DNA of 64,000 nt from contig CATNEN010000025.1 in assembly GCA_950097015.1 (NCBI GenBank), positions 1,116,001 to 1,180,000 on the forward strand, given 5' to 3'. The DNA is from Macrostomum hystrix (taxonomy: Eukaryota > Animalia > Platyhelminthes). Below are positions 7,545-63,385 of the stretch, piece by piece; position 1 is the first letter of the stretch, and each line of letters starts with the position of its first letter. The notes beneath the pieces are model-generated. The model saw nothing but the letters and a program-made list of their open reading frames with translations, was not told the origin of the DNA and ran no database searches. The position numbers and the translations under genes are program-made.

Positions 7545-9170
7545 CTAATAATCCTCAACTCCCTTACCTAGATAATCCTCAACTCCCTTCCCTAGATAAT
7601 CCTCAACTCCCTTACCTAGATAATCCTCAACTCCCTTCCCTAGATAATCCTCAACTCCCTTCCCTAGATAATCCTCAACTCCCTTACCTAGATAATCATC
7701 AACTCCCTTTCCTAGATAATCCTCAACTCCCTTCCCTAGATAATCCTCAACTCCCTTTCCTAGATAATCCTCAACTCCCTTCCCTAGATAATCCTCAACT
7801 CCCTTCCCTAGATAATCCTCAACTCCCTTACCTAGATAATCATCAACTCCCTTTCCTAGATAATCCTCAACTCCCTTCCCTAGATAATCCTCAACTCCCT
7901 TTCCAAGATAATCCTCAACTCCCTTACCTAGATAATCCTCAACTCCCTTCCCTAGATAATCCTCAACTCCCTTACCTAGATAATCCTCAACTCCCTTCCC
8001 TAGATAATCCTCAACTCCCTTACCTAGATAATCCTCAACTCCCTTCCCTAGATAATCCTCAACTCCCTTACCTAGATAATCCTCAACTCCCTTCCCTAGA
8101 TAATCCTCAACTCCCTTACCTAGATAATCCTCAACTCCCTTCCCTAGATAATCCTCAACTCCCTTTCCAAGATAATCCTCAACTCCCTTCCCTAGATAAT
8201 CCTCAACTCCCTTACCTAGATAATCCTCAACTCCCTTCCCTAGATAATCCTCAACTCCCTTACCTAGATAATCCTCAACTCCCTTCCCTAGATAATCCTC
8301 AACTCCCTTTCCAAGATAATCCTCAACTCCCTTACCTAGATAATCCTCAACTCCCTTTCCAAGATAATCCTCAACTCCCTTACCTAGATAATCCTCAACT
8401 CCCTTACCTAGATAATCCTCAACTCCCTTCCCTAGATAATCCTTAACTCCCTTACCTAGATAATCCTCAACTCCCTTACCTAGATAATCCTCAACTCCCT
8501 TCCCTAGATAATCCTCAACTCCCTTACCTAGATAATCCTCAACTCCCTTACCTAGATAATCCTCAACTCCCTTCCCTAGATAATCCTTAACTCCCTTACC
8601 TAGATAATCCTCAACTCCCTTACCTAGATAATCCTCAACTCCCTTACCTAGATAATCCTCAACTCCCTTCCCTAGATAATCCTTAACTCCCTTCTCTTGA
8701 TAATCATCAACTCCCTTACCTAGATAATCCTCAACTCCCTTCCCTAGATAATCCTTAACTCCCTTACCTAGATAATCATCAACTCCCTTCCCTAGATAAT
8801 CCTTAACTCCCTTCCCTAGATAATCATCAACTCCCTTTTCTTGATAATCATCAACTCCCTTTCCAAGATAATCCTCAACTCCCTTCCCTAGATAATCGTC
8901 AACTCCCTTCCCTAGATAATCGTCAACTCCCTTCCCTAGATAATCCTTAACTCCCTTCCCTAGATAATCATCAACTCCCTTTTCTTGATAATCATCAACT
9001 CCCTTTCCAAGATAATCCTCAACTCCCTTCCCTAGATAATCATCAACTCCCTTCCCTAGATAATCGTCAACTCCCTTACCTAGATAATCGTCAACTCCCT
9101 TACCTAGATAATCCTCAACTCCCTTCCCTAAAACTCCTTTTCCGCTAATGATCCTTAACTCCCCTTCCAA
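7545..9170. repeat. 24-bp minisatellite; open on - strand as (LGKGVEDY)n
   Basis: Unit CCTAGATAATCCTCAACTCCCTT(A/C/T), ~66 copies; see findings for coding potential. Confidence 0.95.
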
Positions 9171-9400
9171 TAATAATCCCTACTCACGTTTTCGTAACAA
9201 TGCCCCACTTCCATTCCCCTTTCAACTCCCCTTCCCTTAATATCCCTTAACTTCAACTATCCTTAAAATCCCCCAACTTTCCCTCCCCTAATCTTATCAA
9301 AATCCTAATTATCCCAAGCTACCAATGCCTCGTGAAATACATCTAGACCTCAATATAATTTTTCAGTTCGGGTAGCGCTGCCACAGTACAAAGCACCAAG

Positions 9401-11395
9401 ATGCCGCTCAGCTCCGGTCCCATTCGCGCCAGTGGCCTTCTGTTGCTTCTCGGCAGCAGGAGCCTCAGCCGCGGTCTAGCCTCGGCCGCTGTGCTACCAA
9501 CCAGGCCCTACAAACTGCACAAGCTGGAGTCCGGCCCGCCAGCTGAAGCTGAAGTTACCAGCGAGCAAGCCAAAAATTACTACCGCGAGATGGCCACGGT
9601 GAGGCGCATGGAGACTGCGGCTGGCAACCTGTACAAGGAGAAGGCTATTCGCGGCTTCTGTCATCTGTACAGCGGTCAGGAGGCCTGCTGCGTTGGTATG
9701 GAGGCTGCGCTAGACCGCAACGATCCTGTCATCACCGCCTACCGGGCCCACGGCTGGACCTATACCAGGGGCGTGCCCGTTAAGGCCGTCTTGGCGGAAC
9801 TGACCGGTAGGTCGACCGGCTGCGCTAAAGGCAAAGGCGGCTCTATGCACATGTACAATCACAACTTCTATGGCGGCAACGGCATTGTTGGCGCTCAGGT
9901 TAGCCAGAAAATTAACTATTCCACGCCCCTTCTGATGCTCTTCTTCGCCTCCCTCCTGATCCTTCTCCGCTCCCTCCTGGTCCTTCTCCGCCCCCTCCTG
10001 ATCCTTCTCCGCCCCCTCCTGATCCTTCTCCGCTCCTCCTGATCCTTCTCCGCCCCCTCCTGATCCTTCTCCGCTCCCTCCTGGTCCTTCTCCGCCCCCT
10101 CCTGATCCTTCTCCGCCCCTCCTAATCTCCTAATATTTTTCCGCCCCCTCCTAATCCTTATCCGCCCCCTCCTAATCCTTCTCCGCCCCTCCTGTTTCGT
10201 CTTCGCCCCTCATGATTATTCTCCGCCACCTCCTGACCCTTCATCGCCCCTCCTGATCATGATCCGCCCCATCATGATTTTTCTCCGCCTGCACCTGAAT
10301 TTGTTTTCTACATTTTTCTACCAAATTTTCTTCTTTTAAAGAAAATTACCCGCTAGCTATTACTTACATTCTTCCCATTTCTATCTGCGTCCCACCTGGC
10401 TAGGTGCCCCTTGGAGCGGGCATCGCATTTGCCCAAAAGTACAAAGGCAACAAAAACGTCTGCGTCTCTTTGTACGGCGATGGTGCGGCGAATCAAGGCC
10501 AGGTATTCGAAGCCTTCAACATGGCAAAACTATGGGACCTGCCCTGCATCTTTGTCTGCGAGAACAACAAATACGGCATGGGCACCGCAGTGGAGCGGGC
10601 CGCCGCTTCCACCGCCTATTACACTCGCGGCGACTACATTCCCGGCCTGTGGGTTGACGCCATGGATGTCATCACTGTGCGAGAGGCGACCAAATTTGCC
10701 AGGGACTGGTGCCTCTCCGGCAAGGGACCCATCCTGCTGGAGATGGAGACCTACAGGTCGGTTTCTTAGAATTTACTCCTGAGCACACACGCACACAGAT
10801 ACTGTACGCAGGCACACGCTCACACAGGTGTGTACATCTGCCCTGACTTTCTCATCGTCTGGCAGTGTACACTCTCACTGCGCATTGGAGGTTGGCCCTC
10901 AAGGGCGTAAATTGTAAGACAAGCCCCCAAGCCTTCTCTCCGCGGCTGCGCCCCAAAAAACGTGGCCTCGCCGCGGAATCGAGCTTTAGGACCTTGGCGC
11001 GAGAGGCAAACCGCTCAGCCACACATCTCCCTTACTACTACAAAAACAACTACTGCTACTATTTACCCGCCTCTTACGCCAGGTACCACGGGCACAGCAT
11101 GAGCGATCCGGGCACCAGCTATCGCACCCGCGAGGAGGTCCAATCGATGCGCCAGATGCGCGATCCCATTGCCAGCTTCAGGCAAACTCTGCTTAACGCC
11201 AATCTGATTACCGAGGACGAGCTGAAAGAGATCGACCAGTCCATTCGCAAGGAGGTCGACGAGGCTGTCCAGGCGGCCAAGACCGACCCGGTGCCGGAGC
11301 CGAAGGAATTGTACACCAATGTGTACAGCCAGGCGCCCACTGGTCAGCCCAGCTATCGGATCAGGGGCGTCGACAAGTTCACCTGGAGCGAATGA
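9401..11395 (+). CDS. PDHA1: Pyruvate dehydrogenase E1 component alpha subunit, mitochondrial, ~387 aa
   Basis: Exons 9401-9898, 10404-10756, 11083-11395 (phases 0 and 2). Motifs [29 protein letters not shown]|[11 protein letters not shown]-binding [10 protein letters not shown]...ENN, TYR|[14 protein letters not shown]; Arg/Ser/Leu-rich N-terminal targeting-like peptide. Confidence 0.97.
9925..10290. repeat. 21-bp pyrimidine-rich minisatellite in PDHA intron 1
   Basis: Unit CTGATCCTTCTCCGCCCCCTC (starts at 9961 and 9982); begins ~25 bp after the donor. Confidence 0.93.
10783..11030 (-). mobile_element. tRNA-derived SINE, CpG-rich copy, in PDHA intron 2
   Basis: Minus strand begins GGAGATGTGTGGCTGAGCGGTT (Pol III A box TGGCNNAGYGG), then GCTCGATTCC (B-box-like), a body shared with 2826-3083, and a (GT)n-like tail. 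Confidence 0.8.
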
Positions 11396-12239
11396 ACTCA
11401 ACTAAGGCAGAGAAAGGTGGGTTGGAGAGAGGACTAGCAGATTGTGTGTCAAGTGCCAGCCATGCGACTCTTGGGATTTCATAGTTTTTTTAGTAACCTT
11501 TCTAAATAGAAAACACTGAACATCGTAGCCTTACCTTATAACTCGTTTTGTTATTTTATAGTAAAAATGTGTAACTAATAAAATTTAGATTAGTACATTG
11601 TATGTCTACTAGACAAGGTCTTGTTTCGTCTCCATCTAACTACTATTGTATTTTTAGTAAATCATATTCTAATGTTCCTACTTGTTAGTAGGGTTAGCTG
11701 CACATGCGCGTACAAAATAAAATATCGAAGAGAACAGCTTGGCTTGCCGGCTGCTTATTTTCATCAGGTTTTTTTTATAAAATGCACGAGTTAAAAGACA
11801 CTTGCTATTTCTTTTTAAAAAGTACTTTTAGTGGCAAATCAATAAAATAGCAAAACAATTTCTATGCCTATATATTTCTGTAGGACTTCTAGACTGACCA
11901 CTTTGTCTCTTCTGTTTTTTTGTCTTCTAACAACAAAAAGCGCGAATTACTCGTTTGGCTCTCAGAATTTTAGTTCAATTCTTTGTATTGCAAATTATTA
12001 CCATTATACGCATATACATAATTTATTTGACTAGATAACAGATGAAAGCTATTAGTGCTCTAAATCAATTGAACATAGTTAATAAAAAGTAACTCACACT
12101 CTTCTGCGATTAATCTCGCTCTGTAAAAATGGTTCCTTATTTATTTTTTTGGATAACTGTACGAATACATTCTTAGTGCTAATATATGAAACAAGGTGAG
12201 AAGACAGGAGATTAAGAATAAGATAAGAGAGTGTTAGTG

Positions 12240-14340
12240 GGTGAATTAGAGAGCAAAAATTGGGTGGATTCGAGAGTGTGAATGGTTTGAGTAGGGAGAG
12301 TGTGAATGGGGTGGATTAGGGAGAGTGTGAATGGGGTGGATTAGGGAGAGTGAGAATGGGTGGATTAGGGAGAGTGGGAATGAGGTTAATTAGGGAGTGT
12401 GAATCGGGTGGATTACGGAGAGTTTGAATATGTGGATTAGGGAGTGTGAATGGGTGGATTAGGGAGAGTGAATGGGTGGATTAGGGAGAGTGAATGGATG
12501 GATTAGAGAAATTGAATGGATGGATTAGGGGGAGTGAATGGATGGATTAGGGAGAGTGACTGGATGAATTAGGGAGAGTGAATGGATGAATTAGGGAGTG
12601 AATGGATGGATTAGGGAGTGAATGGATGGATTATGGAGAGTGAATGGATGAATTAGGGAGTGAATGGATAGATTAGGGACAGTGAATGAGGTTAATTAGG
12701 GATTGTGAATCGGGAGGATTACGGAGAGTTTGAATATGTGGATTAGAGACAGTGAATGGATGAATTAGGGAGAGTGTGAATGGATGAATTAGGGGGAGTG
12801 AATGGATGGATTATGGAGAGTGAATGGATGAATTAGGGAGAGTGAATGGATGAATTAGGGAGTGAATGGATGGATTATGGAGAGTGAATGGATGAATTAT
12901 GGAGAGTGAATGGATGAATTAGGGAGTGTGAATGGGTGGATTAGGGAGAGTGTGAATGGATGAATTAGGGAGAGTGAATGGATGAATTAGGGAGTGAATG
13001 GATGGATTATGGAGAGTGAATGGATGAATTAGGGAGAGTGAATGGATGAATTAGGGAGTGAATGGATGGATTATGGAGAGTGAATGGATGAATTAGGGAG
13101 TGAATGGATAGATTAGGGACAGTGAATGAGGTTAATTAGGGATTGTGAATCGGGAGGATTACGGAGAGTTTGAATATGTGGATTAGAGACAGTGAATGGA
13201 TGAATTAGGGAGAGTGTGAATGGATGAATTAGGGGGAGTGAATGGATGGATTATGGAGAGTGAATGGATGAATTAGGGAGAGTGAATGGATGAATTAGGG
13301 AGTGAATGGATGGATTATGGAGAGTGAATGGATGAATTATGGAGAGTGAATGGATGAATTAGGGAGTGTGAATGGGTGGATTAGGGAGAGTGTGAATGGA
13401 TGAATTAGGGAGAGTGAATGGATGAATTAGGGAGTGAATGGATGGATTATGGAGAGTGAATGGATGAATTAGGGAGAGTGAATGGATGAATTAGGGAGTG
13501 AATGGATGGATTATGGAGAGTGAATGGATGAATTAGGGAGTGAATGGATAGATTAGGGACAGTGAATGAGGTTAATTAGGGATTGTGAATCGGGAGGATT
13601 ACGGAGAGTTTGAATATGTGGATTAGAGACAGTGAATGGATGAATTAGGGAGAGTGTGAATGGATGAATTAGGGGGAGTGAATGGATGGATTATGGAGAG
13701 TGAATGGATGAATTAGGGAGAGTGAATGGATGAATTAGGGAGTGAATGGATGGATTATGGAGAGTGAATGGATGAATTATGGAGAGTGAATGGATGAATT
13801 AGGGAGTGTGAATGGGTGGATTAGGGAGAGTGAATGGGTGGATTAGGGAGAGAGTGAATGGATGAATTAGGGAGTGAATGGATGGATTAGGGAGAGTGAA
13901 TGGATGAATTAGGGAGTGAATGGATGGATTAGGGAGAGTGAATGGGTGGATTTGGGAGAGTGAATGGGTGGATTAGGGAGTGAATGGATGGATTAGGGAG
14001 AGTGAATGGGTGGATTAGGGAGAGTGAATGGGTGGATTAGGGAGAGTGAATGGGTGGATTAGGGAGAGTGAATGGGGTGGATTTGGGAGAGTGAATGGGT
14101 GGATTGGGGAGAGTGAATGGGTGGATTAGGGAGAGTGAATGGGTGGATTAGGGAGAGTGAATGGGTGGATTAGGGAGAGTGAATGGGTGGATTAGGGAGA
14201 GTGAATGGGTGGATTAGGGAGAGTGAATGGGTGGATTAGGGAGAGTGAATGGGTGGATTAGGGAGTGAATGGATGGATTAGGGAGAGTGTGAATGGATGG
14301 ATTTGGTAGAGTAAATGGGGTGAATTAGGGGGTGTGATTG
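12240..14340. repeat. 20-24-bp G-rich minisatellite containing TTAGGG, with a 440-bp higher-order repeat
   Basis: Unit GGGTGGATTAGGGAGAGTGAAT (22 bp); marker GATTAGGGACAGTGAATGAGG recurs at 12671, 13111 and 13551. Confidence 0.95.
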
Positions 14341-25853: not shown

Positions 25854-28800
25854 CTAGCCTTCTGACACATCTCTACTAGACATTGACCCATCTCTACTAG
25901 ACATTGACCCATCTCTACTAGACATTGACCCATCTCTACTAGCCTTCTGACACATCTCTACTAGCCTTCTGACACATCTCTACTAGCCTTCTGACACATC
26001 TCTACTAGCCTTCTGACACATCTCTACTAGCCTTCTGACACATCTCTACTAGCCTTCTGACACATCTCTACTAGCCTTCTGACACATCTCTACTAGCCTT
26101 CTGACACATCTCTACTAGCCTTCTGACACATCTCTACTAGACATTGACCCATCTCTACTAGTCATTGACCCATCTCTACTAGCCATTGACCCATCTCTAC
26201 TAGTCATTGACCCATCTCTACTAGCCATTGACCCATCTCTACTAGTCATTGACCCATCTCTACTAGCCTTCTGACCCAACTCTACTAGCCTTCTGACCCA
26301 TCTCTACTAGCCATTGCCCCATCTCTACTAGCCATTGACCCATCTCTACTAGCCATTGACCCATCTCTACTAGCCTACTGACACATATCTACCAGCCATT
26401 GACCCATCTCTACTAGCCATTGACCCATCTCTACTAGCCATTGACCCATCTCTACTAGCCATTGACCCATCTCTAATAGCCATTGACCCATCTCTACTAG
26501 CCTTCTGACCCATCTCTACTAGCCATTGACCCATCTCTACTAGACATTGACCCATCTCTACTAGACATGACCCATCTCTACTAGCCATTGACCCATCTCT
26601 ACTAGCCATTGACCCATCTCTAATAGCCTTCTGACCCATCTCTACTAGCCATTGACCCATCTCTACTAGCCATTGACCCATCTCTACTAGCCATTGACCC
26701 ATATCTACTAGCCATTGACCCATCTCTACTAGCCTTCTGACACATCTCTACTAGCCATTGACCCATCTCTACTAGCCATTGACCCATCTCTACTAGCCTA
26801 CTGACACATATCTACCAGCCATTGACCCATCTCTACTAGCCATTGACCCATCTCTACTAGCCATTGACCCATCTCTACTAGCCATTGACCCATCTCTAAT
26901 AGCCATTGACCCATCTCTACTAGCCATTGACCCATCTCTACAAGCCATCGACCCATCTCTACTAGCCATTGACCCATCTCTACTAGCCATTGACCCATCT
27001 CTACTAGCCTTCTGACCCATCTCTACTAGCCATTGACCCATCTCTACTAGACATTGACCCATCTCTACTAGACATGACCCATCTCTACTAGCCATTGACC
27101 CATCTCTACTAGCCATTGACCCATCTCTAATAGCCTTCTGACCCATCTCTACTAGCCATTGACCCATCTCTACTAGCCATTGACCCATCTCTACTAGCCA
27201 TTGACCCATATCTACTAGCCATTGACCCATCTCTACTAGCCTTCTGACACATCTCTACTAGCCATTGACCCATCTCTACTAGCCATTGACCCATCTCTAC
27301 TAGCCATTGACACATCCCTACTAGCCTACTGACCCATCTCTACTAGCCATTGCCCCATTTCTACTAGACATTGACCCATCTCTACTAGCCTTCTGACCCA
27401 TCTCTACTAGCCTTCTGACACATCTCTACTAGACTTCTGACCCATCTCTACTAGCCATTGACCCATCTCTACTAGACATTGACCCATCTCTACTAGACAT
27501 TGACCCATCTCTACTAGCCATTGACCCATCTCTACTAGCCATTGACCCATCTCTACTAGCCATTGACCCATATCTACTAGCCATTGACCCATCTCTACTA
27601 GCCTTCTGACACATCTCTACTAGCCATTGACCCATCTCTACTAGCCATTGACCCATCTCTACTAGCCATTGACACATCCCTACTAGCCTACTGACCCATC
27701 TCTACTAGCCATTGACCCATCTCTACTAGCCATTGACCCATCTCTACTAGCCATTGACCCATCTCTACTAGCCATTGACACATCCCTACTAGCCTACTGA
27801 CCCATCTCTACTAGCCATTGACCCATCTCTACTAGCCATTGACCCATCTCTACTAGCCATTGACACATCCCTACTAGCCATTGACCCATCTCTACTAGCC
27901 ATTGACCCATCTCTACTAGCCATTGCCCCATCTCTACTAGACATTGACCCATCTCTACTAGCCATTGACCCATCTCTACTAGCCTTCTGACACATCTCTA
28001 CTAGTCATTGACCCATCTCTACTAGCCATTGAGACATCTCAACTAACAATTGACCCATCTCTACTAGCCACTGACCCATCTCTACTAGTCATTGACCCAT
28101 CTCTACTAGCCATTGACCTATCTCTTCTAGCCATTGACCCATCTCTACTAGCCTTCTGACACATCTCTACTAGTCATTGACCCATCTCTACTAGCCATTG
28201 AGACATCTCAACTAACAATTGACCCATCTCTACTAGCCACTGACCCATCTCTACTAGTCATTGACACATCCCTACTAGCCTACTGACCCATCTCTACTAG
28301 CCATTGCCCCATTTCTACTAGACATTGACCCATCTCTACTAGCCTTCTGACCCATCTCTACTAGCCTTCTGACACATCTCTACTAGCCTTCTGACCCATC
28401 TCTACTACCATCTAGACCCATCTCTACTAGACATTGACCCATCTCTACTAGACATTGACCCATCTCTACTAGCCATTGACCCATCTCTACTAGCCATTGA
28501 CCCATCTCTACTAGCCATTGACCCATATCTACTAGCCATTGACCCATCTCTACTAGCCTTCTGACACATCTCTACTAGCCATTGACCCATCTCTACTAGC
28601 CATTGACCCATCTCTACTAGCCATTGACACATCCCTACTAGCCTACTGACCCATCTCTACTAGCCATTGCCCCATCTCTACTAGCCATTGACCCATCTCT
28701 ACTAGCCATTGACCCATCTCTACTAGCCTTCTGACACATCTCTACTAGTCATTGACCCATCTCTACTAGCCATTGACCCATCTCTACTAGTCATTGACCC

Positions 28801-55252: not shown

Positions 55253-56611
55253 TTACAGCAAAAATTTGCCCAGAATGAGGCCCAGAATCATAGCTAGGAC
55301 CAGGAACAGTGCCGGCGGCACCAGTGGTCCTCTGGCTGTGGCCGTCGCGACCGCGTTGGCAGAAGAGCCGCCGCCAGTTGGAACACTAGGACGCATAGCT
55401 AATTTGCGCAGTCGAAGCTCCTGGTTTAAACAGAAAAGCAAATATTTATGAGATTATTAAGAGTTCTCAAGTGTCGTCCCGTTCGGATGCAAAAATTGTT
55501 CTAGGATGAGAAGGTGGGCGATTCTCAGGTTCAGAACGTGTTCTAAAATATGTGCGTTTGGGTGTCTATTCGGGATTCTCTTTAATCGGAATTCAGTCTT
55601 CGAGAGGTCAGGAGTAAAAATCTGTTCCTGAGCAGGTCATCAAGCTGTAGAAATTAGTACTCATAATTAACTAGTTGGTATCAACTATATTAAACGGCTC
55701 CCAAGTCTATTCTCTTCTATCTTGAAAAAATCAAGGAGTTTTTTTATATTAAAAAGTGCTTTTTAATGCATCCAGGTTTAGAATACAGTCGTTAATATAA
55801 ATAAATATATAACACATGTGACAGTGACACCAATCGTATCCTGTCTCATCTCACCCGTGTCTCATCTCTCCTGCGTCTCATCTGTCCCGTGTCTCATCTC
55901 TCCCGTGTTATCTCCTTTGCCATCTCTCCAGTGTCTCATCTCTCTCCCATCTCATATTTCTACAATCAATGCGGCCCGCTGTAGTCACCTCTTCTTCTCG
56001 CTAGCTAATAAGTTTGCCGACCCTGGTATAACAGAAATAAAGATACTGACCTGTTCGCCTAGTCGCGCATTATCATCCTTCAATCGTTGCAGTTCCTGTT
56101 GCAATCCTCGCAAAGTTTTTGGCGAATCAGCATCAGCCGAATCGTACTGCTGATGCTGCTGCTTGTTGTTCGCTGAGGCAGTCGACGTGGCAGCGGCCGG
56201 AGCCGGTACAGACCCGTCGGCATCGAGCAGGACGACTCGCAGCTTGGAGTCCATTAGCCGGTCGCTAGTGGCAGACTTCCAGGCTTCGTCAACATCAACA
56301 GCGCCAGTTGGCATCAGCAGGCTCTGCACCATGAATTTGTGCCTGGCCCGCTGGTCAGCAGTAAAGTCGGCCTGGTCGCTGCCAGCAGGCTGGAGCATCA
56401 CGGCGACTTCAACTTCGTCGCCGGGCTGAATTAGGCCACTATTGGGGCGGACACAGTAGCGCTTAGGCGCCGTAGTCTTGACCTTGAAAGCCACCGGCCT
56501 ATCAGTGCCGGCTGGATTGCTCAGGCGCATTGTGGTGGAGACAACACGATCGAATGGACCGCGGAATTTCAGCTCCGTGTCGGGGACTAGTTTCAGCACT
56601 TGGCCAGGCAT
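55253..56611 (-). CDS. VAP: VAMP-associated protein (VAPA/VAPB family): MSP domain, coiled coil and C-terminal TM anchor, ~242 aa
   Basis: Exons 56611-56051 and 55420-55253 (intron GTCAGT...AACCAG, phase 0). VAP consensus FKVKTTAPKRYCVRPNSG, HKFMVQS, DSKLRVV; coiled coil LQQELQRLKDDNARL; tail anchor LFLVLAMILGLILGKFLL. Confidence 0.96.
55825..56025 (+). mobile_element. Truncated hAT-type MITE (right TIR) with degenerate 16-bp repeats, in VAP intron
   Basis: Degenerate GTGTCTCATCTCTCCC units, then GCGGCCCGC and AAGTTTGCCGACCCTG, the reverse complement of the 37548 terminus. Confidence 0.68.
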
Positions 56612-56752
56612 GATTCTGAGTATTGCTTTTAATTAATCTTCAATTATTCTTTTTTAGTCTATTCACGAATCCGCTATTTTTTGGCTTGCGTACGATAGAT
56701 CAGCTTAAATAGGCAAAACATGGAAACACATTTTTGGGGTGTTTGACAACAA

Positions 56753-57130
56753 CTAGAGAATGCACAGTTGGGAACCGATCCTGAACTAGAGAATGCACAG
56801 TTAGGTACCGATCCTGAACTAGAGAATGCACAGTTGGGAACCGATCCTGAACTAGAGAATGCACAGTTGGGAACCGATCCTGAACTAGAGAATGCACAGT
56901 TAGGTACCGATCCTGAACTAGAGAATGCACAGTTGGGAACCGATCCTGAACTAGAGAATACACAGTTGGGAACCGATCCTGAACTAGAGAATGCACAGTT
57001 AAGTACCGATCCTGAACTAGAGAATGCACAGTTGGGAACCGATCCTGAACTAGAGAATGCACAGTTGGGAACCGATCCTGAACTAGAGAATGCACGGTTA
57101 AGTACCGATCCTGAACTAAAGAATGCACAG
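56753..57130. repeat. 33-bp minisatellite between the ADAD-like and VAP genes
   Basis: Unit GAACTAGAGAATGCACAGTTGGGAACCGATCCT, ~11 copies. Confidence 0.95.
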
Positions 57131-57492
57131 GAACTGTAGGAACTCAAACTCATGTATTTTAGGAACTCAAACATAAACTAGGGACTGCACTATCGCTTTA
57201 TGGCATTAAGTGTCAATCGAAAGTAAATATAAGATAATTGTGAATGTTTAAAAATGACAAACATGACAGCTACACTGGAATTTATGCACCGTTTAACAGA
57301 AAAGCAATAAAGAAGTGCTGTTTGAGATGTGAGTATTAGAAGCCAAATAGGCACTGATAGGCACAAATAGTACAATTTTCATGTAGTAAAAAAAGAACAG
57401 ACCGGGTTTAAACGTAATTTTTGAAACAGTTTATTGATGCTAACGAACGAGCGTAGAATCAAGAACTCAGAGTTTGAATTAGAAATAATTCA

Positions 57493-60400
57493 TTAATTCG
57501 AACCCAGTAAACAAAAGTCACTCGGGTCCATTTCTCCATTCTTCGTGGCCCAAGCGCCGCGGTTATGTTTTACCAGCTCCTCGAAAAATATCTTTTTAGA
57601 CTTTGCGTAGTCTTCGCACTTCAATGATCGCATACTTATTGAATCGAAATCGGCGCCACACCTGGCTAGCTTATTGCGCAATCGTTCATTAATCCTAGCC
57701 ACAGTTGGCGAGGCGGAGCCGGACATTGCGACTGCCTCTTTGGCTAGTTTAACAATGCGATTTAGCGCGGCTCGTTTAGATAGTCGAGAAATACCGCCGG
57801 CAGTGGCTGCGTCAGGCTGTTGACGCTCGGCGTCTGTGACATTCTGCGACCTACCAGGTGCGTTTAAAAACGATAGCTAAATAGTAACGTACATGAGAAA
57901 TTCGGTAAAAAAAATTTTCACCTGTAAATTTCCTTAACGCCTAGAGAGCTGTTGAGAACTTCGACTTGACCCTGGCCGGACACGCCCATTGGTCTGTACC
58001 AGTTCACGGACAGGACCGCCTCGCCATAGTCAATATCCCCGCCGTTAATGCCGCCCCTCTGGCAGAGTCGAAACGGATTGGATGTTCGGCCTAGCCAGGG
58101 ATCGCTGGCCGTTCTATAGGCTGCGGCGGCCAGGCTGGCGCGAAATCTGGCGCCAGGTAGGCGGCAAAGAAAGCCGCGCGCCATGTCTCCGTGGCTGTAG
58201 CTTCCAGCGACATCTACGGACTGGGGATTGAGGTGAGATGATTGGGTTAGTCAGAAACCTCATCTGACAGGTTAGATAAGACATGAGATGATTGGGTTAA
58301 TGAGACTACCTCATCTGACAGGTTAGATAAGACATGAGATGATTGGGTTAATGAGACTACCTCATCTGACAGGTTAGATAAGACATGAGATGATTGGTTT
58401 GATTAGATTATCTAGTTATTTGAGTGACTTTCGGGGTCAGACAGTGTTCACTGTCACTGTGCCTTGAGGGTTGGCCTTTATGTGCATCAAAGTTGCAAAT
58501 GAATGTGGCCGTAGATTCGAGCTCAGGGATCTTGGTGCGGGAGGGAAGCGCCTTAACCACTCTGCCATTCACCCGTGAGAGTATTGATTATGATGGAAGT
58601 AATACGAGCGTAATTTTTAAGACAACAAGCAAGTTGATTACAATAACAGGTTAAATGGTTGCAGTATTAGACCAACCTGCAGAAAAATCGGCTCAATAAA
58701 GTTAGCCAACAGGCCACCCTGTAAGCCCAAATAGTTGCATCGCAGCAGCTTGTCTGAGCCGCAGTGCACAGCCAGACTGCTTGGATCGGCGGCCTCTTCT
58801 TCGCTGAAGGTACGCACAGCCGAACAATCGCAGCTTTCGTAGCAGGTCAGCGAACCGTAGCGGCTTAGGTCTGGTTCGAGTACGCCGCACCTGTAGGGCG
58901 ATGCTTGTCATGGTAAATACTTTGTACTATAGTGCAGTTAAGTTATATTTATTTGATTGGATCTTTGCTCAGTTTTTAGTCATCAATTTGTGCTGATTTA
59001 ATTTACTCGTAAGAAAAAAAATCTTCTATATATATAAAAGTGAAAACTCTGTCTGTCTGTGTGTGTGTGTGTGTGCAACCTTTTGTCTTTATAGACGCCG
59101 AAACCGCTCAACCAAATCGCACCAAACTTTGCACATACCTAAAACCACCTACGCTGAGTGCAATAGGCTACTCAAATTCCCGAAAAATAATTTCCTTCCT
59201 GCTCAAAAGTGCAAAAAACTGCTCAAAAATCGTCAAAAAATCACTCAATTCGACATATCGTCGCCCCACTTTGTCAGATTTTCTCCAAATTTGATCCACT
59301 TACACTTTACATGTTTTCCAACAATGCTGTCAATTTTGAACATCTCTACTCAATCCAGAGCAAAGCTGCATCATCTCAAAGTGAGTCACTTTTTGTTTTC
59401 CGAGGACAGCCACCCCAACTCCCCTCCGCCACTCTGCGGGCCAAATTTTATTACAGCCACCCCCTCCCTTCCCCGGGCGCCGAAGCCCCAGACTGTACAT
59501 TGTATTTCAAGCCGTGAATGTACACAGCCCAAACCCCTAGACTGTCTACTGGCCCCAAGCAGCACTGAGACTGAGTGCGGTGAGTGCGGTGGCGTCCCAG
59601 TGCGCAGCTAGGCTCTCCGGTCGATATTTCTCTCCAGCCAGCCTGGGATAGAAGAAAGAGAGAGGCTGGCGTTGACTGGCTGTCAGAGAGGGCAATTCTG
59701 TGTCCTAGAAATGATGCCGCCAACGAAATTAACTACCAACTCCTTCAGGAGTTGCCAGGTGCAGTTTTCACCTACAAGTCAATTGATACAACGTTGACTG
59801 ATGACACCGCTGTGGAGTATCCTGTTGAGTTTCTGAACTCTCTAGATCCTCCTGGAACTCCATCGCACAACTTGCAGCTGAAAGTTGGGGCACCAATTAT
59901 GCTCCTCCGCAACCTGAATGCGCCAAGGCTGTGTAACGGCACCAGACTGATAGTCAGGCGGCTCTTCCCACACGTGATTGAGGCCACGATAATGACTGGA
60001 TCTGGCAGAGGAGAGTCTGTGTTCGTTCCCCGGATTCCAATTATCCCCACGGACCTGCCATTTCAGTTCAAGCGACTGCAGTTCCCTGTGAGAGTGTGCT
60101 TTGCGATGACTATTAACAAGGCTCAGGGACAGTCGCTGAAGGTAGCTGGCATCAACCTGGAGACTCCTTGCTTCTCGCATGGGCAGCTTTATGTCGCCTG
60201 CTCCCGTGTTGGAACTCCAGCTGGCCTATTCATTTTCGCACCAAGGGGAAGAACGAAGAATGTGGTGTATCCCCAGGCCTTGAGGTGACTCGCAAGCAAT
60301 TAATAGAAAAGTAGTCACGAATTGACCTTGACCTGTCTAACTCTGAACTCTGAAACAGTTTAATTTTGTTTCTTTGACATTGTTATTGTTATGCCATGGC

Positions 60401-63385
60401 TATTTTCCTTATGTATACGCGTGTACATGCATACTGTATACAGAGGCAGATTTAGGGGGGGGCGGGGGGGCAGTCGCCCCCATAAATTTTAATCATGGGA
60501 ATAAGATGCCCCCACCAGGGGTGCCAGTCGCAGCACTGGCGCCCCTTTTCGGCCGCTGGCGCCCCTTTTTCAGCCGCTGGCTCCCGTTTTTCAGCCGCTG
60601 GCGCCCTTTCTTGGCTCCTGGCGCCCTTTTTCGGCCGCTGGCACCCACTCTGTGATTCTCATGGCGCTCCCCTGACAGACCGCCCGAAAACAAAATTCCT
60701 GGATCTGCCACTGACTGTATAGAGGAGTGGCTAAGAGACATGTTTCTAAAGAAGTAATCAAGAGGGGGCTGTTTGGACAAACTTTTCACTTATTTTTTAC
60801 TTAAAACGCCCTTAAACAAACTCTTCACTTTTCATTAATGCAGTAAATAAATAAATGGTGACCTTCACTATAAAGTTAATACAGAGACGTGAATTGCTTA
60901 CTGCTTTGCTTTAAATTTCTGCCCCAAAAACAACGGGCAAAAAAGCTAGTTAAAGGTATAGATATGCAAGCGTCTTTAAATGATTTTTTGCATATTTTAT
61001 CGAGTCTTTTTATTCAGAAATAATGCGAGTATTTCTGAGAAATCTTTGGTAGCAGATTAGAGTGTTTTTTCGACAATTATTTGATTATATGTTGATTAAC
61101 ATTTTAATATAGATTATTTCTGCCTATTTTTCAAGTTACAACTGAATCCTAATCAGCAATGTCCCAAATGCCAAGCGCACCTGTCACGCAGCAGTTCATC
61201 CTGGGACTGTCTGGCGAACAGGCCGGCACCGGCATCCTGACTGGCGCTGTCGCCAGCCGAACAGTCGCCATCTGGTGGAGCGCTTAAAAACAGGTGCAAA
61301 GCCAGGCCGGGCTTTAAGCGCAACCGATCGCCCTGACGATTCGGTTCTAGCCAGCCGGCGGAACCAGTGCGGCCAGGCGCTGTCACGTAGGCCGACACCT
61401 CCTGGGCTAGGCGAATTCGCAGGGCCCGTTTTGCGCAGGTGAACGCAGTGCCATCGATGACGCGCTCGCCGTAGGATTCGAAGATATGCTCAAGACAGTC
61501 GTCGCTGCAGCCGGATCCGGTGCCAAGGGCGACCAGCTCCACCTCTGAGGAATGGATTGAATAATTTGTGTATTACTTCGAAATACTACTGTCTGCTATT
61601 TCTCTACTGTATTATTTCTATAGGTCAGTAGGAGTCAGAGAAACAGAATTTCTATAGGGGGTGTCAGAGGAAGTGGATTTCTATAGGTAAGTAGGAGTCA
61701 GAGGAACTGGATTTCTATAGGTAAGTAGGAGTCAGAGGAACTGGATTTCTATAGGTAAGTAGGAGTCAGAGGAACTGGATTTCTACTGGGGGTGTCAGAG
61801 AAACTAAATTTCTATAGGGAGGTGTCAGAGAAACTAAATTTCTATTGGGGGTGTCAGAGAAACATACTTTTAAGAGGAAGGCATCGATAAAATGTATATT
61901 TCAAGTGGAGCTTAAGAGAAAAAATATCCTAGAATGAGACTTACTCGGCTCAGCAGAGCGGGAATCGGACAGGAAGATGGCCGCCACCTTATTGACTCGC
62001 ACAATATTCACTGGCGGTCCGAGTAGACAGTCCAGTTGATTCTGGCACAGTTGCGCGTACATATCGCCTGGCAGATTAAGAGACGGCGCGGTTGATCCCA
62101 GTGCAACAGAAGCCGCCGCCGCCGCCGCCGCAGGCGTCTGGGCTCGAGTCGGCGAGGCTGGCCTATTGCCTCTGGCGATGACATTTAAAGCTCGCTTAGC
62201 GGATTGCTCTTTGGCTTTCTGCTTGGATTGGGCTTCGCCAGACTCGTACTCGGTGGTGATACCGTCAATGGTTAGAGTGACATAATAGGCGAAGTTGCCG
62301 CCAACCTATAGGTGATTAAAAGCTTAATGATACTATGGGAACTTAAGGTCAAAAGACTAAGGGAACCCTGACAGCGAGAAAGGAAAGAGGAACAAAGGTA
62401 CTGCAGGAAGAAACGGGAACAGGTCCAAGTATGCAGGATAAAGAGGGGAACATGTGTCACGCTGAAAGGATAGGGAGGGGAACAGGTGTCAAACTGACAG
62501 GATATGAAGTTAAGCAGGTGTCAAACTAACAGGATAGGAAATAAAGCAGGTGTAGAACTGACAGGATAGGAAGGGGAACAGGTGTCAAACTGACAGGATA
62601 GGGAGGGGACCAGGCGTCGGACTGAGGGATTAGGACGAAAAAGGTGTCGATGTCGGACAGGTGTCCGGCTCAGCATGTGTCGGACTGAGGGGAGGGTAAA
62701 AGACTGATCAAGATAAGCGGTTTACATGCGAACCAAATAAACGAACCATAGGTGACGTGGGCACGTATTCGATAGTTCCGCGCATCTGAGAGCAGTACTC
62801 GTTAAGCATCTGATGAGCCAGTTTCTCCGATTTGCCATTTAGATAGGCACGCAGCATTTCTCTTGCCGTGTCGAGCTTTGGCACGTCGGCGAATCGCGGC
62901 ACACCGAAAGGGCGCCCAGCCTGGTCTAAGCTGGGTGCTAGGCGAACATTGCCCGAGCGCTCCGACTGGGTTCGATTGTCAACAAGTGGCACCTGACTGA
63001 TTGTTGAAGCAGCCACAGCAGCAGCAGATGTCACAGAGGACGAACGAGGAGCAATCTGGCAGTACTGCACAGCTGGCTTTTGGGTCTGGCTGCTTAGCAG
63101 CGGATAAGCTTGATTTTGAGATGCGGCAGCGCCGCCCAATGTTGGAAAGTCACTATCATCAGCCTGATAAGCGGGGGCTGGCACACTGGGCCCTAATAGA
63201 CCCAAGCTTTGCTTGCGGCTATCCAAAGAAATGTGGGCATTCATAGGAAGATTAAACACCTTTTTGACATGATTTTTAGATTTAAGATGCTCTTCATATT
63301 GTGGCCAGGCTGGCATCAGGCCTGACTTGCAAACTGGACACGTGTAGGGCGGACCCTCAGATTCCAACATATCCTGGGTTGGCAT
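57493..63385 (-). CDS. ADAD: ADAR/ADAD-family protein: C2H2 (matrin/U1-type) zinc finger + 1 dsRBD + predicted inactive adenosine-deaminase domain, ~744 aa
   Basis: Exons 63385-62747, 62305-61945, 61544-61181, 58890-58677, 58220-57922, 57850-57493; all GT-AG, phases 0,1,2,0,2; 2235 nt open. ZnF CPVC-x13-HLKSKNH; dsRBD HQMLNEYC...FAYYVTLTIDG...GEAQSKQKAKEQSAKRAL; deaminase landmarks VALGTG, KRALR, LHLFLSAPPDG, SDKLLRCNYLGLQGGLLANFIEPIFL, LSVNW, EVLN, SRLSK, YAKSK, GAWATK. Family call is solid; ADAD versus divergent ADAR orthology is inferred. Confidence 0.88.
58235..58400. repeat. ~51-bp tandem repeat (3+ copies) in ADAD-like intron 4
   Basis: GAGATGATTGGGTTAATGAGACTACCTCATCTGACAGGTTAGATAAGACAT starts at 58235, 58285, 58336 and 58387. 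Confidence 0.9.
59636..60288 (+). pseudogene. Helitron RepHel fragment: C-terminal PIF1-family helicase half
   Basis: WLSERAILCPRND, LKVGAPIMLLRNL..PRLCNGTRL, QFPVRVCFAMTINKAQGQSL, HGQLYVACSRV; no Rep domain or Walker A motif; preceded by acceptor TTTCTCTCCAG. Confidence 0.9.
60441..60713. mobile_element. hAT-type MITE nested in the Helitron
   Basis: CAGAGGCAGATTTAGGGGGG ... CCTGGATCTGCCACTG TIRs; perfect 8-bp TSD ACTGTATA at 60433-60440 and 60714-60721; internal GGCGCCCTTTT(T)CGGCCGCT repeats. Confidence 0.9.
61610..61865. repeat. ~34-bp minisatellite in ADAD-like intron 2
   Basis: Unit ATTTCTATAGGTAAGTAGGAGTCAGAGGAACTGG (starts at 61681 and 61715). Confidence 0.88.
62400..62700. repeat. 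32-bp degenerate minisatellite in ADAD-like intron 1
   Basis: CAGGTGTCAAACTGACAGGATAGG... starts at 62483, 62515, 62547 and 62579. Confidence 0.85.

What the first reader, a model, noticed from the sequence alone, without database searches (positions are those of the whole stretch)
57493..63385. Zinc-finger + dsRBD + catalytically dead adenosine deaminase: an unusual ADAD-like pseudo-editase
Seen: six minus-strand exons splice cleanly into a 744-aa ORF that the ORF track shows only as unrelated pieces. Where active ADARs have DCHAE (Zn-ligand His, catalytic Glu; H394/E396 in human ADAR2), this protein has DGTAF. PCG (C451) is PDG, and MSCSDK (C516) is HCGSDK. Established: one dsRBD plus a degenerate deaminase is the ADAD1/ADAD2 architecture (germ-granule proteins in mammals), and C. 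elegans ADR-1 is an inactive regulator of an active ADAR. Unusual: an N-terminal CPVC-x13-H-x5-H matrin/U1-type finger, a dsRNA-binding type of finger that I do not know from vertebrate ADADs or ADARs. Inference: a non-catalytic dsRNA reader, editing regulator or germline/stem-cell RNP scaffold with an extra RNA-binding module.
Basis: partly seen in the sequence, partly recalled or inferred. Interest (0 to 1): 0.82.

Follow-up and report, generated by a model that had tools for sequence, protein, structure and literature searches.

The report
Flatworm dead-deaminase RNA binder with zinc finger
This is a real, expressed and conserved flatworm (Macrostomum) gene for an ADAD-like protein: an RNA-editing-enzyme relative that has lost its catalytic residues, keeps one double-stranded-RNA-binding domain, and carries an extra N-terminal zinc finger absent from its closest known relatives.

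Summary
Six minus-strand exons (57493-63385), all with GT-AG introns, give a 744-aa ORF. One 2,414-nt transcript contig from a public run joins all six exons at exactly these junctions, so the finger exon belongs to the same mRNA as the dsRBD and deaminase exons. Pfam finds dsrm and A_deamin. Alignment to human ADAR1 confirms DCHAE>DGTAF and PCG>PDG, and MSCSDK is HCGSDK.

Macrostomum lignano has an uncharacterised ortholog (A0A1I8H8C9, 729 aa, about 66% identical) with the same finger, dsRBD and dead motifs. It shares four intron positions and the same downstream MSP/VAP neighbour. dN/dS is about 0.13 or less, and the finger is the best-conserved segment. The gene is therefore functional, not decaying.

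The nearest relatives outside flatworms are molluscan ADAD1 proteins. They share the T394/D451 substitutions but have no finger. Most IP6 ligands are kept.

The U1/matrin-type assignment of the finger is only marginally supported: Pfam zf-met is below threshold, and the best PDB match is a ZNF622 finger at E 0.024.

Catalytically dead ADAD-like proteins in protostomes are already published, so this is a new architectural variant of a known kind. So far it is seen only in Macrostomum. Its function is inferred to be non-catalytic dsRNA binding; nothing here tests that. Moderate interest.

The parts
62747..63385 (-). Exon 1 (aa 1-213): start codon, zinc finger, disordered linker and the N-terminal helices of the dsRBD
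   Evidence: Transcript contig X5 record 22 covers it and joins it to exon 2.
63260..63346 (-). C2H2 finger, aa 14-42: C16-x2-C19-x13-H33-x5-H39
   Evidence: Translation. 80% identical to M. lignano over aa 1-50, with all four ligands invariant. Pfam zf-met E 0.045, below threshold. Best PDB match is a ZNF622 finger, E 0.024. AF2 pLDDT 75, with the helix carrying both His.
62747..62875 (-). dsRBD, first part: N-terminal extension helix and helix alpha1 (aa 171-213)
   Evidence: The AF2 model of the M. lignano ortholog has helices 162-175 and 183-193 at pLDDT about 70-80. The LxxFLxGK...LxEYCS pattern is shared with the molluscan ADAD1 sequences.
61945..62305 (-). Exon 2 (aa 214-334): the beta1-3 and alpha2 part of the dsRBD (62159-62305), then an Ala/Pro-rich linker and the start of the deaminase domain
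   Evidence: Pfam dsrm E 1e-4, 23.2 bits. The region is spliced as modelled. The ortholog's dsRBD matches ADAR1 dsRBD3 in Foldseek, E 1.6e-3.
61181..61544 (-). Exon 3 (aa 334-455): N-terminal part of the deaminase domain, with DGTAF (61441-61455, replaces DCHAE) and PDG (61267-61275, replaces PCG)
   Evidence: Pfam A_deamin E 3e-9. Alignment to ADAR1. Coordinates checked.
58677..58890 (-). Exon 4 (aa 455-526): HCGSDK (58749-58766, replaces MSCSDK) and the conserved GLQGxLL / EPxxL block
   Evidence: Pfam A_deamin E 1.5e-7. Alignments. Joint confirmed in runs X3 and X5.
57922..58220 (-). Exon 5 (aa 527-626): middle of the deaminase domain, including the S(V/I)NW strand
   Evidence: Alignment to ADAD1/ADAR3. 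Spliced as modelled.
57493..57850 (-). Exon 6 (aa 626-744 plus stop): C-terminal helices of the deaminase domain, with the IP6 ligand equivalents K629, Y668, K672, W687 and K690
   Evidence: Alignment, residue list from Table 1 of PMC10278661. Stop codon at 57493-57495.
57429..57434 (-). AATAAA polyadenylation signal, 58 nt after the stop codon
   Evidence: The transcript contig runs beyond position 57450.

Best explanation
This is the orthologue, in a Macrostomum-type flatworm, of the uncharacterised M. lignano protein A0A1I8H8C9. It is an ADAD-like (adenosine-deaminase-domain-containing) pseudo-enzyme.

Its layout, from the N terminus:
- one C2H2 finger of the U1/matrin-like spacing class;
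- a disordered linker of about 120 aa;
- one dsRBD with an extra N-terminal helix;
- a full-length ADAR-type deaminase domain.

In the deaminase domain two zinc ligands (H394>T, C451>D) and the proton-shuttle Glu (E396>F) are replaced, while most inositol-hexakisphosphate ligands are kept. The fold is therefore probably preserved as a scaffold.

Shown here: the gene structure, its transcription and splicing, the domain content, the loss of catalytic residues, conservation under purifying selection, and an affinity to molluscan ADAD1.

Inferred: it cannot deaminate adenosine and acts as a non-catalytic reader of double-stranded or structured RNA. The finger would give a second nucleic-acid or partner contact. 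By analogy with ADAD1/2, ADAR3, ADR-1 and squid ADAR/D-like, it would act either by competing with or guiding active ADARs, or in an editing-independent RNP.
For: - Gene model and ORF.
- Full-length spliced transcript contig, plus junction contigs from a second study.
- Pfam dsrm and A_deamin.
- Motif substitutions against ADAR1.
- M. lignano ortholog, 66% identical over 708 aligned positions, with the same finger and the same dead motifs (DSTAF, PPDGD, HCGSDK).
- Introns 1-4 at the same positions and phases, and the same downstream MSP/VAP gene.
- Nei-Gojobori estimate: dN 0.26 against saturated synonymous sites (pS 0.70), so dN/dS is about 0.13 or less. The finger segment has dN 0.12 and 80% identity.
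- 8 of 11 coding differences in related samples are synonymous.
- Exhaustive HMMER search with exon 3: after the ortholog, the best hits are ADAT1s and molluscan ADAD1 (Aplysia DSTCL/PPDGD/SQSDK).
- In local BLAST and a 9-row ML tree, Macrostomum groups with the molluscan ADAD1 proteins (support 95/95).
- Equivalents of R400(K), R401, K519, R522, K629, Y668, K672, W687 and K690 are retained.
- The AF2 model of the ortholog matches ADAR1 and ADAR2 dsRBD-plus-deaminase structures (E 6e-18 to 1e-11).
Against: - No biochemical or expression-pattern data exist for this protein.
- The finger fails Pfam thresholds, and its fold matches are not significant.
- The dsRBD is marginal in Pfam: 23.2 bits here, and 18.9 bits (below the cutoff) in M. 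lignano. Its KKxAK motif reads KQKAK.
- The tree had only 9 rows, with no ADAR1, invertebrate ADAR2 or vertebrate ADAD, and the Macrostomum stem is very long (3.1 substitutions per site). Grouping with ADAD1 could be long-branch attraction between degenerate domains.
- Mouse ADAD1/2 do not affect editing (PMC7360552), so 'editing regulator' is only one of several possible roles.
Confidence: 0.8

Rival explanations
1. It is not an ADAD orthologue. It is a flatworm ADAR1 or ADAR2 paralogue that lost catalysis independently, as C. elegans ADR-1 did, and resembles molluscan ADAD1 only by convergence or long-branch attraction.
For: The Macrostomum stem branch is 3.1 substitutions per site. Only 10 proteins in 1.84 billion reach E<1e-3 with exon 3, so the domain is highly divergent. 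Published AD-domain trees have poor resolution (PMC4323055).
Against: Thr at the H394 position and Asp at C451, within an identical PPDGD, are shared with Aplysia ADAD1. The same residues are listed as T/L/D/Q in Table S2 of PMC9989829. The LxxFLxGK..LxEYCS lead-in to the dsRBD is also shared. BLAST scores to ADAD1 (112 and 92 bits) exceed those to ADAT1 (74) and ADAR3 (58).
Confidence: 0.17
2. The N-terminal finger is not an RNA-binding U1/matrin-type finger. It would instead be a protein-interaction, localisation or DNA-binding C2H2 module.
For: All finger families are below threshold in Pfam. The structural neighbours are ordinary DNA-binding C2H2 fingers (ZNF524, GAGA, ZNF512, ZFAT), all at noise level. 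The Cys-to-His spacing is x13, not the x12 of zf-met.
Against: The H-x5-H spacing and the HLKSKNH helix fit the zf-met, JAZ and ZNF622 pattern. The best sequence matches are a ZNF622 finger (E 0.024) and, weakly, Xenopus dsRNA-binding ZFa. The finger sits in a protein that otherwise binds dsRNA.
Confidence: 0.3
3. The deaminase domain keeps some catalytic or metal-binding activity through substitute residues: Asp at position 451 and the His-Cys pair of HCGSDK.
For: A Cys survives next to the C516 position and HMMER aligns it to C516. His, Cys and Asp can all ligate zinc. The residues are conserved between the two species.
Against: The proton-shuttle Glu is Phe in both species and H394 is Thr. 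The GEG base-flipping loop is absent. Squid ADAR/D-like, with comparable losses, is inactive in vitro (PMC10278661).
Confidence: 0.03
4. It is a decaying pseudogene, or a chimeric gene model that joins two separate genes.
For: None was found. The ORF list by itself shows only separate pieces.
Against: A single transcript contig spans all the exons. The reading frame is intact in two species with saturated synonymous divergence and dN/dS of about 0.13 or less. Intron positions are conserved.
Confidence: 0.01

Closest known systems
Molluscan ADAD1 / ADAD-like proteins (Aplysia XP_005110992.1, Potamilus KAK3608690.1; squid sqADAR/D-like, PMC10278661)
   Same: An N-terminal dsRBD with the same lead-in helix pattern, followed by a full-length A_deamin domain with the catalytic residues replaced. 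Aplysia shares Thr at position 394 and PPDGD at position 451. These were the best non-flatworm hits found here. Squid ADAR/D-like is experimentally inactive and inhibits sqADAR2.
   Different: They have no N-terminal zinc finger and no linker of about 120 aa. Some have two dsRBDs. Identity is only about 26-29%. The Macrostomum domain has extra insertions and a very long branch.
Vertebrate ADAD1 (TENR) and ADAD2
   Same: One dsRBD plus a deaminase domain with three of the four zinc-site residues mutated. They are non-editing RNA-binding proteins.
   Different: The vertebrate proteins keep His394 and have Lys at position 451 (Table S2 of PMC9989829). They have no finger. Their testis-specific roles in germ-cell differentiation (PMC7360552) are not tested for the flatworm gene.
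C. elegans ADR-1 and vertebrate ADAR3
   Same: Catalytically inactive ADAR-family proteins that modulate editing by binding dsRNA or the active ADAR.
   Different: Both have two dsRBDs. ADAR3 keeps all its catalytic residues and has an R-domain. Neither has a C2H2 finger, and neither groups with this protein.
U1/matrin-type (zf-met, zf-C2H2_jaz) fingers of ZNF622/Rei1, JAZ/ZNF346, ZFa and ZFR/Zn72D
   Same: A C-x2-C ... H-x5-H finger with a basic H-L-K-S-K-x-H helix. Several of these proteins bind dsRNA, and Zn72D/ZFR regulates ADAR editing (PMC7306179).
   Different: This is a single finger with x13 spacing. It falls below every Pfam threshold. It is fused to an ADAR-family protein rather than to other fingers or a DZF domain.

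Membership tests
ADAR-type adenosine deaminase domain (Pfam A_deamin, PF02137) | Significant match to the family profile over the whole domain | tested here: met
   Exon 3 E 3e-9 and exon 4 E 1.5e-7, both above the 27-bit cutoff. The M. lignano ortholog matches profile positions 1-326 of 329 at E 7.8e-26. The fold matches ADAR1/2 at E 6e-18.
Catalytically active ADAR | Zinc ligands H394, C451 and C516 plus the proton-shuttle E396 (human ADAR2 numbering) | tested here: not met
   H394>T, E396>F, C451>D. C516>G in the gapless alignment, with a Cys one residue earlier. The M. lignano ortholog has the same residues at these four positions.
ADAD (adenosine deaminase domain-containing) family | One dsRBD plus one deaminase domain, and no Z-alpha domain | tested here: met
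   Pfam finds one dsrm and one A_deamin and nothing else above threshold. The AF2 model shows one alpha-beta-beta-beta-alpha dsRBD.
ADAD (adenosine deaminase domain-containing) family | Deaminase domain groups phylogenetically with ADADs rather than with ADAR1, ADAR2 or ADAT1 | tested here: inconclusive
   It groups with two molluscan ADAD1 proteins at 95/95 in a 9-row tree, against ADAR3 and ADAT1s, and gives the best BLAST scores to ADAD1. No ADAR1, invertebrate ADAR2 or vertebrate ADAD sequences were available, and the branch is long.
ADAD (adenosine deaminase domain-containing) family | Germ-cell-specific expression and function (mammalian members) | not tested
   Only whole-sample transcript contigs were seen. 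No tissue data were found.
dsRBD (Pfam dsrm, PF00035) | Profile match and alpha-beta-beta-beta-alpha fold | tested here: met
   Exon 2 alone scores 23.2 bits against a cutoff of 23. The ortholog scores 18.9 bits, below the cutoff. The ortholog's AF2 model has the fold at pLDDT 70-86 and matches ADAR1 dsRBD3 (E 1.6e-3, TM 0.65). The sequence match is marginal; the fold match is good.
U1/matrin-type C2H2 finger (Pfam zf-met PF12874 / zf-C2H2_jaz PF12171) | C-x2-C-x12-H-x5/6-H ligand pattern | tested here: met
   C16-x2-C19-x13-H33-x5-H39, one residue longer than the consensus. All four ligands are invariant in the ortholog.
U1/matrin-type C2H2 finger (Pfam zf-met PF12874 / zf-C2H2_jaz PF12171) | Score above the family's gathering threshold | tested here: not met
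   zf-met scores 14.5 bits (cutoff 21.2) and zf-C2H2_jaz 11.8 bits (cutoff 22.6); only the helix half aligns. The best PDB sequence match is a ZNF622 finger, E 0.024.
U1/matrin-type C2H2 finger (Pfam zf-met PF12874 / zf-C2H2_jaz PF12171) | Beta-beta-alpha zinc-finger fold | tested here: inconclusive
   AF2 of aa 1-50 gives pLDDT 75, a helix at 27-37 carrying His33, and only single-residue strands. The Foldseek best hits are C2H2 fingers at E 3.7-7.6. VIA-align Z is 2.7 or lower.
U1/matrin-type C2H2 finger (Pfam zf-met PF12874 / zf-C2H2_jaz PF12171) | Zinc-dependent binding of dsRNA | not testable with these tools
   Needs recombinant protein.

The most novel reading that the evidence does not exclude
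The finger-dsRBD-dead-deaminase architecture is a macrostomorph or flatworm invention. It would create a bipartite dsRNA reader with its own target set, for example a germline or neoblast RNP factor or a dedicated modulator of the worm's active ADARs. The finger would supply specificity that other ADADs lack. A conserved His-Cys/Asp cluster in the old active site might form a new structural metal or ligand site.
Probability: 0.15. Interest if true: 0.6.

Novelty: new variant of a known kind. Interest (0 to 1): 0.42.

Why it matters
Inactive ADAR-family proteins (ADAD1/2, ADAR3, ADR-1, squid ADAR/D-like) recur across animals, but how they work is poorly understood. This example sits in an experimentally tractable flatworm genus in which M. 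lignano is a model species. It is under clear purifying selection and has an added, highly conserved finger. It offers a natural test of how extra RNA-binding modules retarget a dead editase, and it would be the first flatworm ADAD-like protein to be described, as far as the databases and papers searched here show. The gain is incremental: the class is known, and only the fusion is new.

Tried and rejected
- Word-index protein searches. Three were run: with the M. lignano ortholog, with a profile that included molluscan ADAD1, and with the deaminase region alone. They returned only the M. lignano cluster plus one ADAR3. No broad ADAR/ADAD sequence set could be collected, and the absence of the architecture elsewhere is not established.
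- ESM Atlas look-up of exon 3: no usable hit.
- Foldseek and VIA-align on the isolated finger model gave noise-level matches. No finger subtype could be assigned from the fold.
- ARAGORN on a tRNA-like stretch in intron 4: no tRNA.
- Literature searches for Macrostomum or flatworm ADAD/ADAR and for the M. lignano gene ids found nothing.
- The AD-domain sequences in Table S2 of PMC9989829 could have fed a proper phylogeny.
- Pseudogene and chimeric-model readings were rejected.
- The search of earlier findings returned only this same finding.
Full report
**1. Is it there?**

The minus strand of 57493-63385 holds six ORF pieces. They join through five GT..AG introns into a 2,235-nt reading frame of 744 codons plus a stop. 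The exons are 62747-63385, 61945-62305, 61181-61544, 58677-58890, 57922-58220 and 57493-57850. AATAAA lies 58 nt after the stop.

Public runs were found with the stretch and laid on 5,991 letters, within the operators' limit. Run X5 holds a single 2,414-nt contig that covers every exon and skips exactly the five modelled introns. Runs X1 and X3, from a second study, show the intron-2 and intron-4 joints. The tool does not record these runs as RNA. However, X5 holds the spliced form and has no depth over parts of introns 1 and 2, so it behaves as cDNA.

**2. Domains and motifs**

The exons were searched one by one, by reference.
- Pfam gives dsrm in exon 2 (E 1e-4) and A_deamin in exon 3 (E 3e-9) and exon 4 (E 1.5e-7).
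- Against solved structures, exon 3 aligns to human ADAR1, with 'vidgtaf' opposite 'vndchae' and 'sappdgd' opposite 'stapcgd'.
- HCGSDK replaces MSCSDK. In the gapless alignment C516 becomes Gly with a Cys one position earlier.

So H394, E396 and C451 are lost and C516 is at best displaced. The GEG flipping loop is also absent.

The critical-residue list comes from Table 1 of PMC10278661. By that list, the equivalents of R400 (as Lys), R401, K519, R522, K629, Y668, K672, W687 and K690 are present, while Y658 and K662 are not. This suggests the IP6-centred fold is kept.

The finger reads C16-x2-C19-x13-H33-x5-H39.

**3. Relatives**

An exhaustive HMMER scan of 1.84 billion representatives with exon 3 found only ten proteins at E<1e-3.
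- The first (E 1e-40) is Macrostomum lignano A0A1I8H8C9, a 729-aa 'DRBM domain-containing protein'. It has paralogous loci Mlig013792g1/g3 and Mlig028402g1, all annotated as hypothetical.
- It is 66% identical to the window's protein over 708 aligned positions. It has the same N-terminal finger, dsRBD and dead motifs (DSTAF, PPDGD, HCGSDK).
- The remaining hits are ADAT1s, two molluscan ADAD1 proteins (Aplysia XP_005110992.1 and Potamilus KAK3608690.1) and one repeat-rich oomycete protein matched only in short stretches.

The window therefore comes from a macrostomid flatworm other than M. lignano, probably a congener.

The M. lignano locus (L001) has introns 1-4 at the same positions and phases. 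It lacks the window's 71-nt intron 5. It is followed by the same MSP/VAP gene.

**4. Selection**

Between the two species, synonymous sites are saturated (pS 0.70) while dN is 0.26, giving dN/dS of about 0.13 or less.
- The finger segment (aa 1-50) is the most conserved part: 80% identity, dN 0.12.
- The dsRBD has a ratio of 0.12 and the deaminase domain 0.14.
- Of eleven coding differences seen in contigs of closely related samples, eight are synonymous.

The gene, including its dead deaminase and its finger, is maintained by selection.

**5. Which family?**

Aplysia ADAD1 has DSTCL, PPDGD and SQSDK at the three motifs. It therefore shares Thr394 and the PPDGD motif with Macrostomum. Table S2 of PMC9989829 lists the same residues for Aplysia (T/L/D/Q).

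The lead-in to the dsRBD (LxxFLxGK...LxEYCS) is also shared with the molluscan proteins.

Local BLAST of the model gives 112 and 92 bits to the molluscan ADAD1s, 74 to a barnacle ADAT1 and 58 to an ADAR3. A 9-row ML tree groups Macrostomum with the two ADAD1s at 95/95 support, but on a stem of 3.1 substitutions per site. This is suggestive, not decisive. No ADAR1, invertebrate ADAR2 or vertebrate ADAD sequences could be obtained, because the three word-index searches returned almost nothing.

The joined protein has no reference, so the M. lignano ortholog was folded in its place. The window's exons were supplied as separate alignment rows. The model has a confident dsRBD with an extra N-terminal helix and a moderately confident deaminase core. 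It matches ADAR1 and ADAR2 dsRBD-plus-deaminase structures (E 6e-18 to 1e-11), and its dsRBD matches ADAR1 dsRBD3.

**6. The finger**

Neither molluscan ADAD1 has a finger. Both begin M..(K)..QYIPGLTQR. Table S2 of PMC9989829 lists no finger for any ADAD, but it records only Z-DNA-binding and dsRBD counts.

Support for the subtype is thin.
- Pfam: zf-met 14.5 bits (cutoff 21.2), zf-C2H2_2 14.2, zf-C2H2_jaz 11.8. Only the helix half aligns.
- A profile of the finger against PDB sequences finds a ZNF622 finger best (E 0.024) and Xenopus ZFa weakly (E 5.2).
- AF2 on aa 1-50 gives pLDDT 75, with the helix bearing His33. Foldseek and VIA-align return C2H2 fingers only at noise level.

'C2H2 finger of the U1/matrin-like spacing class' is the best reading. 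dsRNA binding is inference.

**7. What is known, and how this compares**

ADAD-like proteins (one dsRBD plus a deaminase domain) are described across Metazoa (PMC4323055). Catalytically inactivated ADADs are reported in some protostomes and deuterostomes (PMC9989829). Squid ADAR/D-like is inactive in vitro and inhibits sqADAR2 (PMC10278661). Mouse ADAD1/2 are required for spermatogenesis but do not affect editing (PMC7360552). No paper on flatworm ADADs or on the M. lignano genes was found.

The class is therefore known. The new element is the conserved N-terminal finger, seen so far only in Macrostomum, together with the first description of a flatworm member.

**8. Mechanism**

Most likely (about 0.8) it is a non-catalytic RNA-binding protein. 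The dsRBD, and probably the finger, engage structured RNA. The IP6-stabilised dead deaminase domain serves as a scaffold or interaction surface. Nothing here tests whether it modulates ADAR editing, as ADR-1, ADAR3 and sqADAR/D-like do, or acts in an editing-independent RNP, as mammalian ADADs do.

**9. Procedure notes**

The joined 744-aa model was never sent to a database search or to structure prediction. The joined sequence was built only inside local scripts, from /data/window.fa. There it was used for translation, pairwise alignment, dN/dS, BLAST against proteins already fetched, and the small tree.

**Verdict**

This is a new variant of a known kind, of moderate interest.

Noticed in passing
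window 59083-60950 (ORF 59584-60288, + strand), inside intron 3: A Pif1/Helitron-like helicase fragment (Pfam Pif1_2B_dom, E 2e-19) lies antisense within the gene's largest intron. Transcript contigs cover it at about 2.5-3 times the host gene's depth and carry several variants, as expected for a multicopy, transcribed repeat.
   Followed up: partly
window 57851-57921: This 71-nt intron 5 is spliced out in RNA here, but the M. lignano orthologue has no intron at this position (exons 5 and 6 are fused). It is an intron gain or loss within the genus.
   Followed up: partly
window 55985-56611 (- strand) and L001:18204-19537: An MSP-domain (VAP-like) gene lies immediately downstream of the ADAD-like gene, in the same orientation in both species. 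Microsynteny is conserved despite saturated synonymous divergence.
   Followed up: partly
window 56751-57130; 58234-58397; 60536-60646; 61614-61863; 62444-62625: A 33-bp minisatellite (11.5 copies, 93% matches) lies in the intergenic spacer. Tandem arrays of 51, 20, 34 and 32 bp lie in introns 4, 3, 2 and 1. Public contigs break at several of them.
   Followed up: no
window 8001-14000 and 26001-28000: 2-kb blocks with extreme GC skew (+0.88 at 12001-14000, -0.51 at 8001-10000, -0.60 at 26001-28000), probably strand-biased satellites or simple repeats.
   Followed up: no
M. lignano proteins P0011-P0014: At least three M. lignano loci encode near-identical copies of the orthologue (Mlig013792g1, Mlig013792g3, Mlig028402g1). 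I recall that this species has a recent genome duplication, which would fit; that was not checked here.
   Followed up: no
window 63133-63171 (aa 72-84) versus Aplysia ADAD1 N-terminus: A short motif, DDS(D/E)FP, follows the finger in Macrostomum and sits near the N-terminus of Aplysia ADAD1. If homologous, it would mean the finger was added upstream of an ancestral ADAD1-like N-terminus. It could equally be chance.
   Followed up: no
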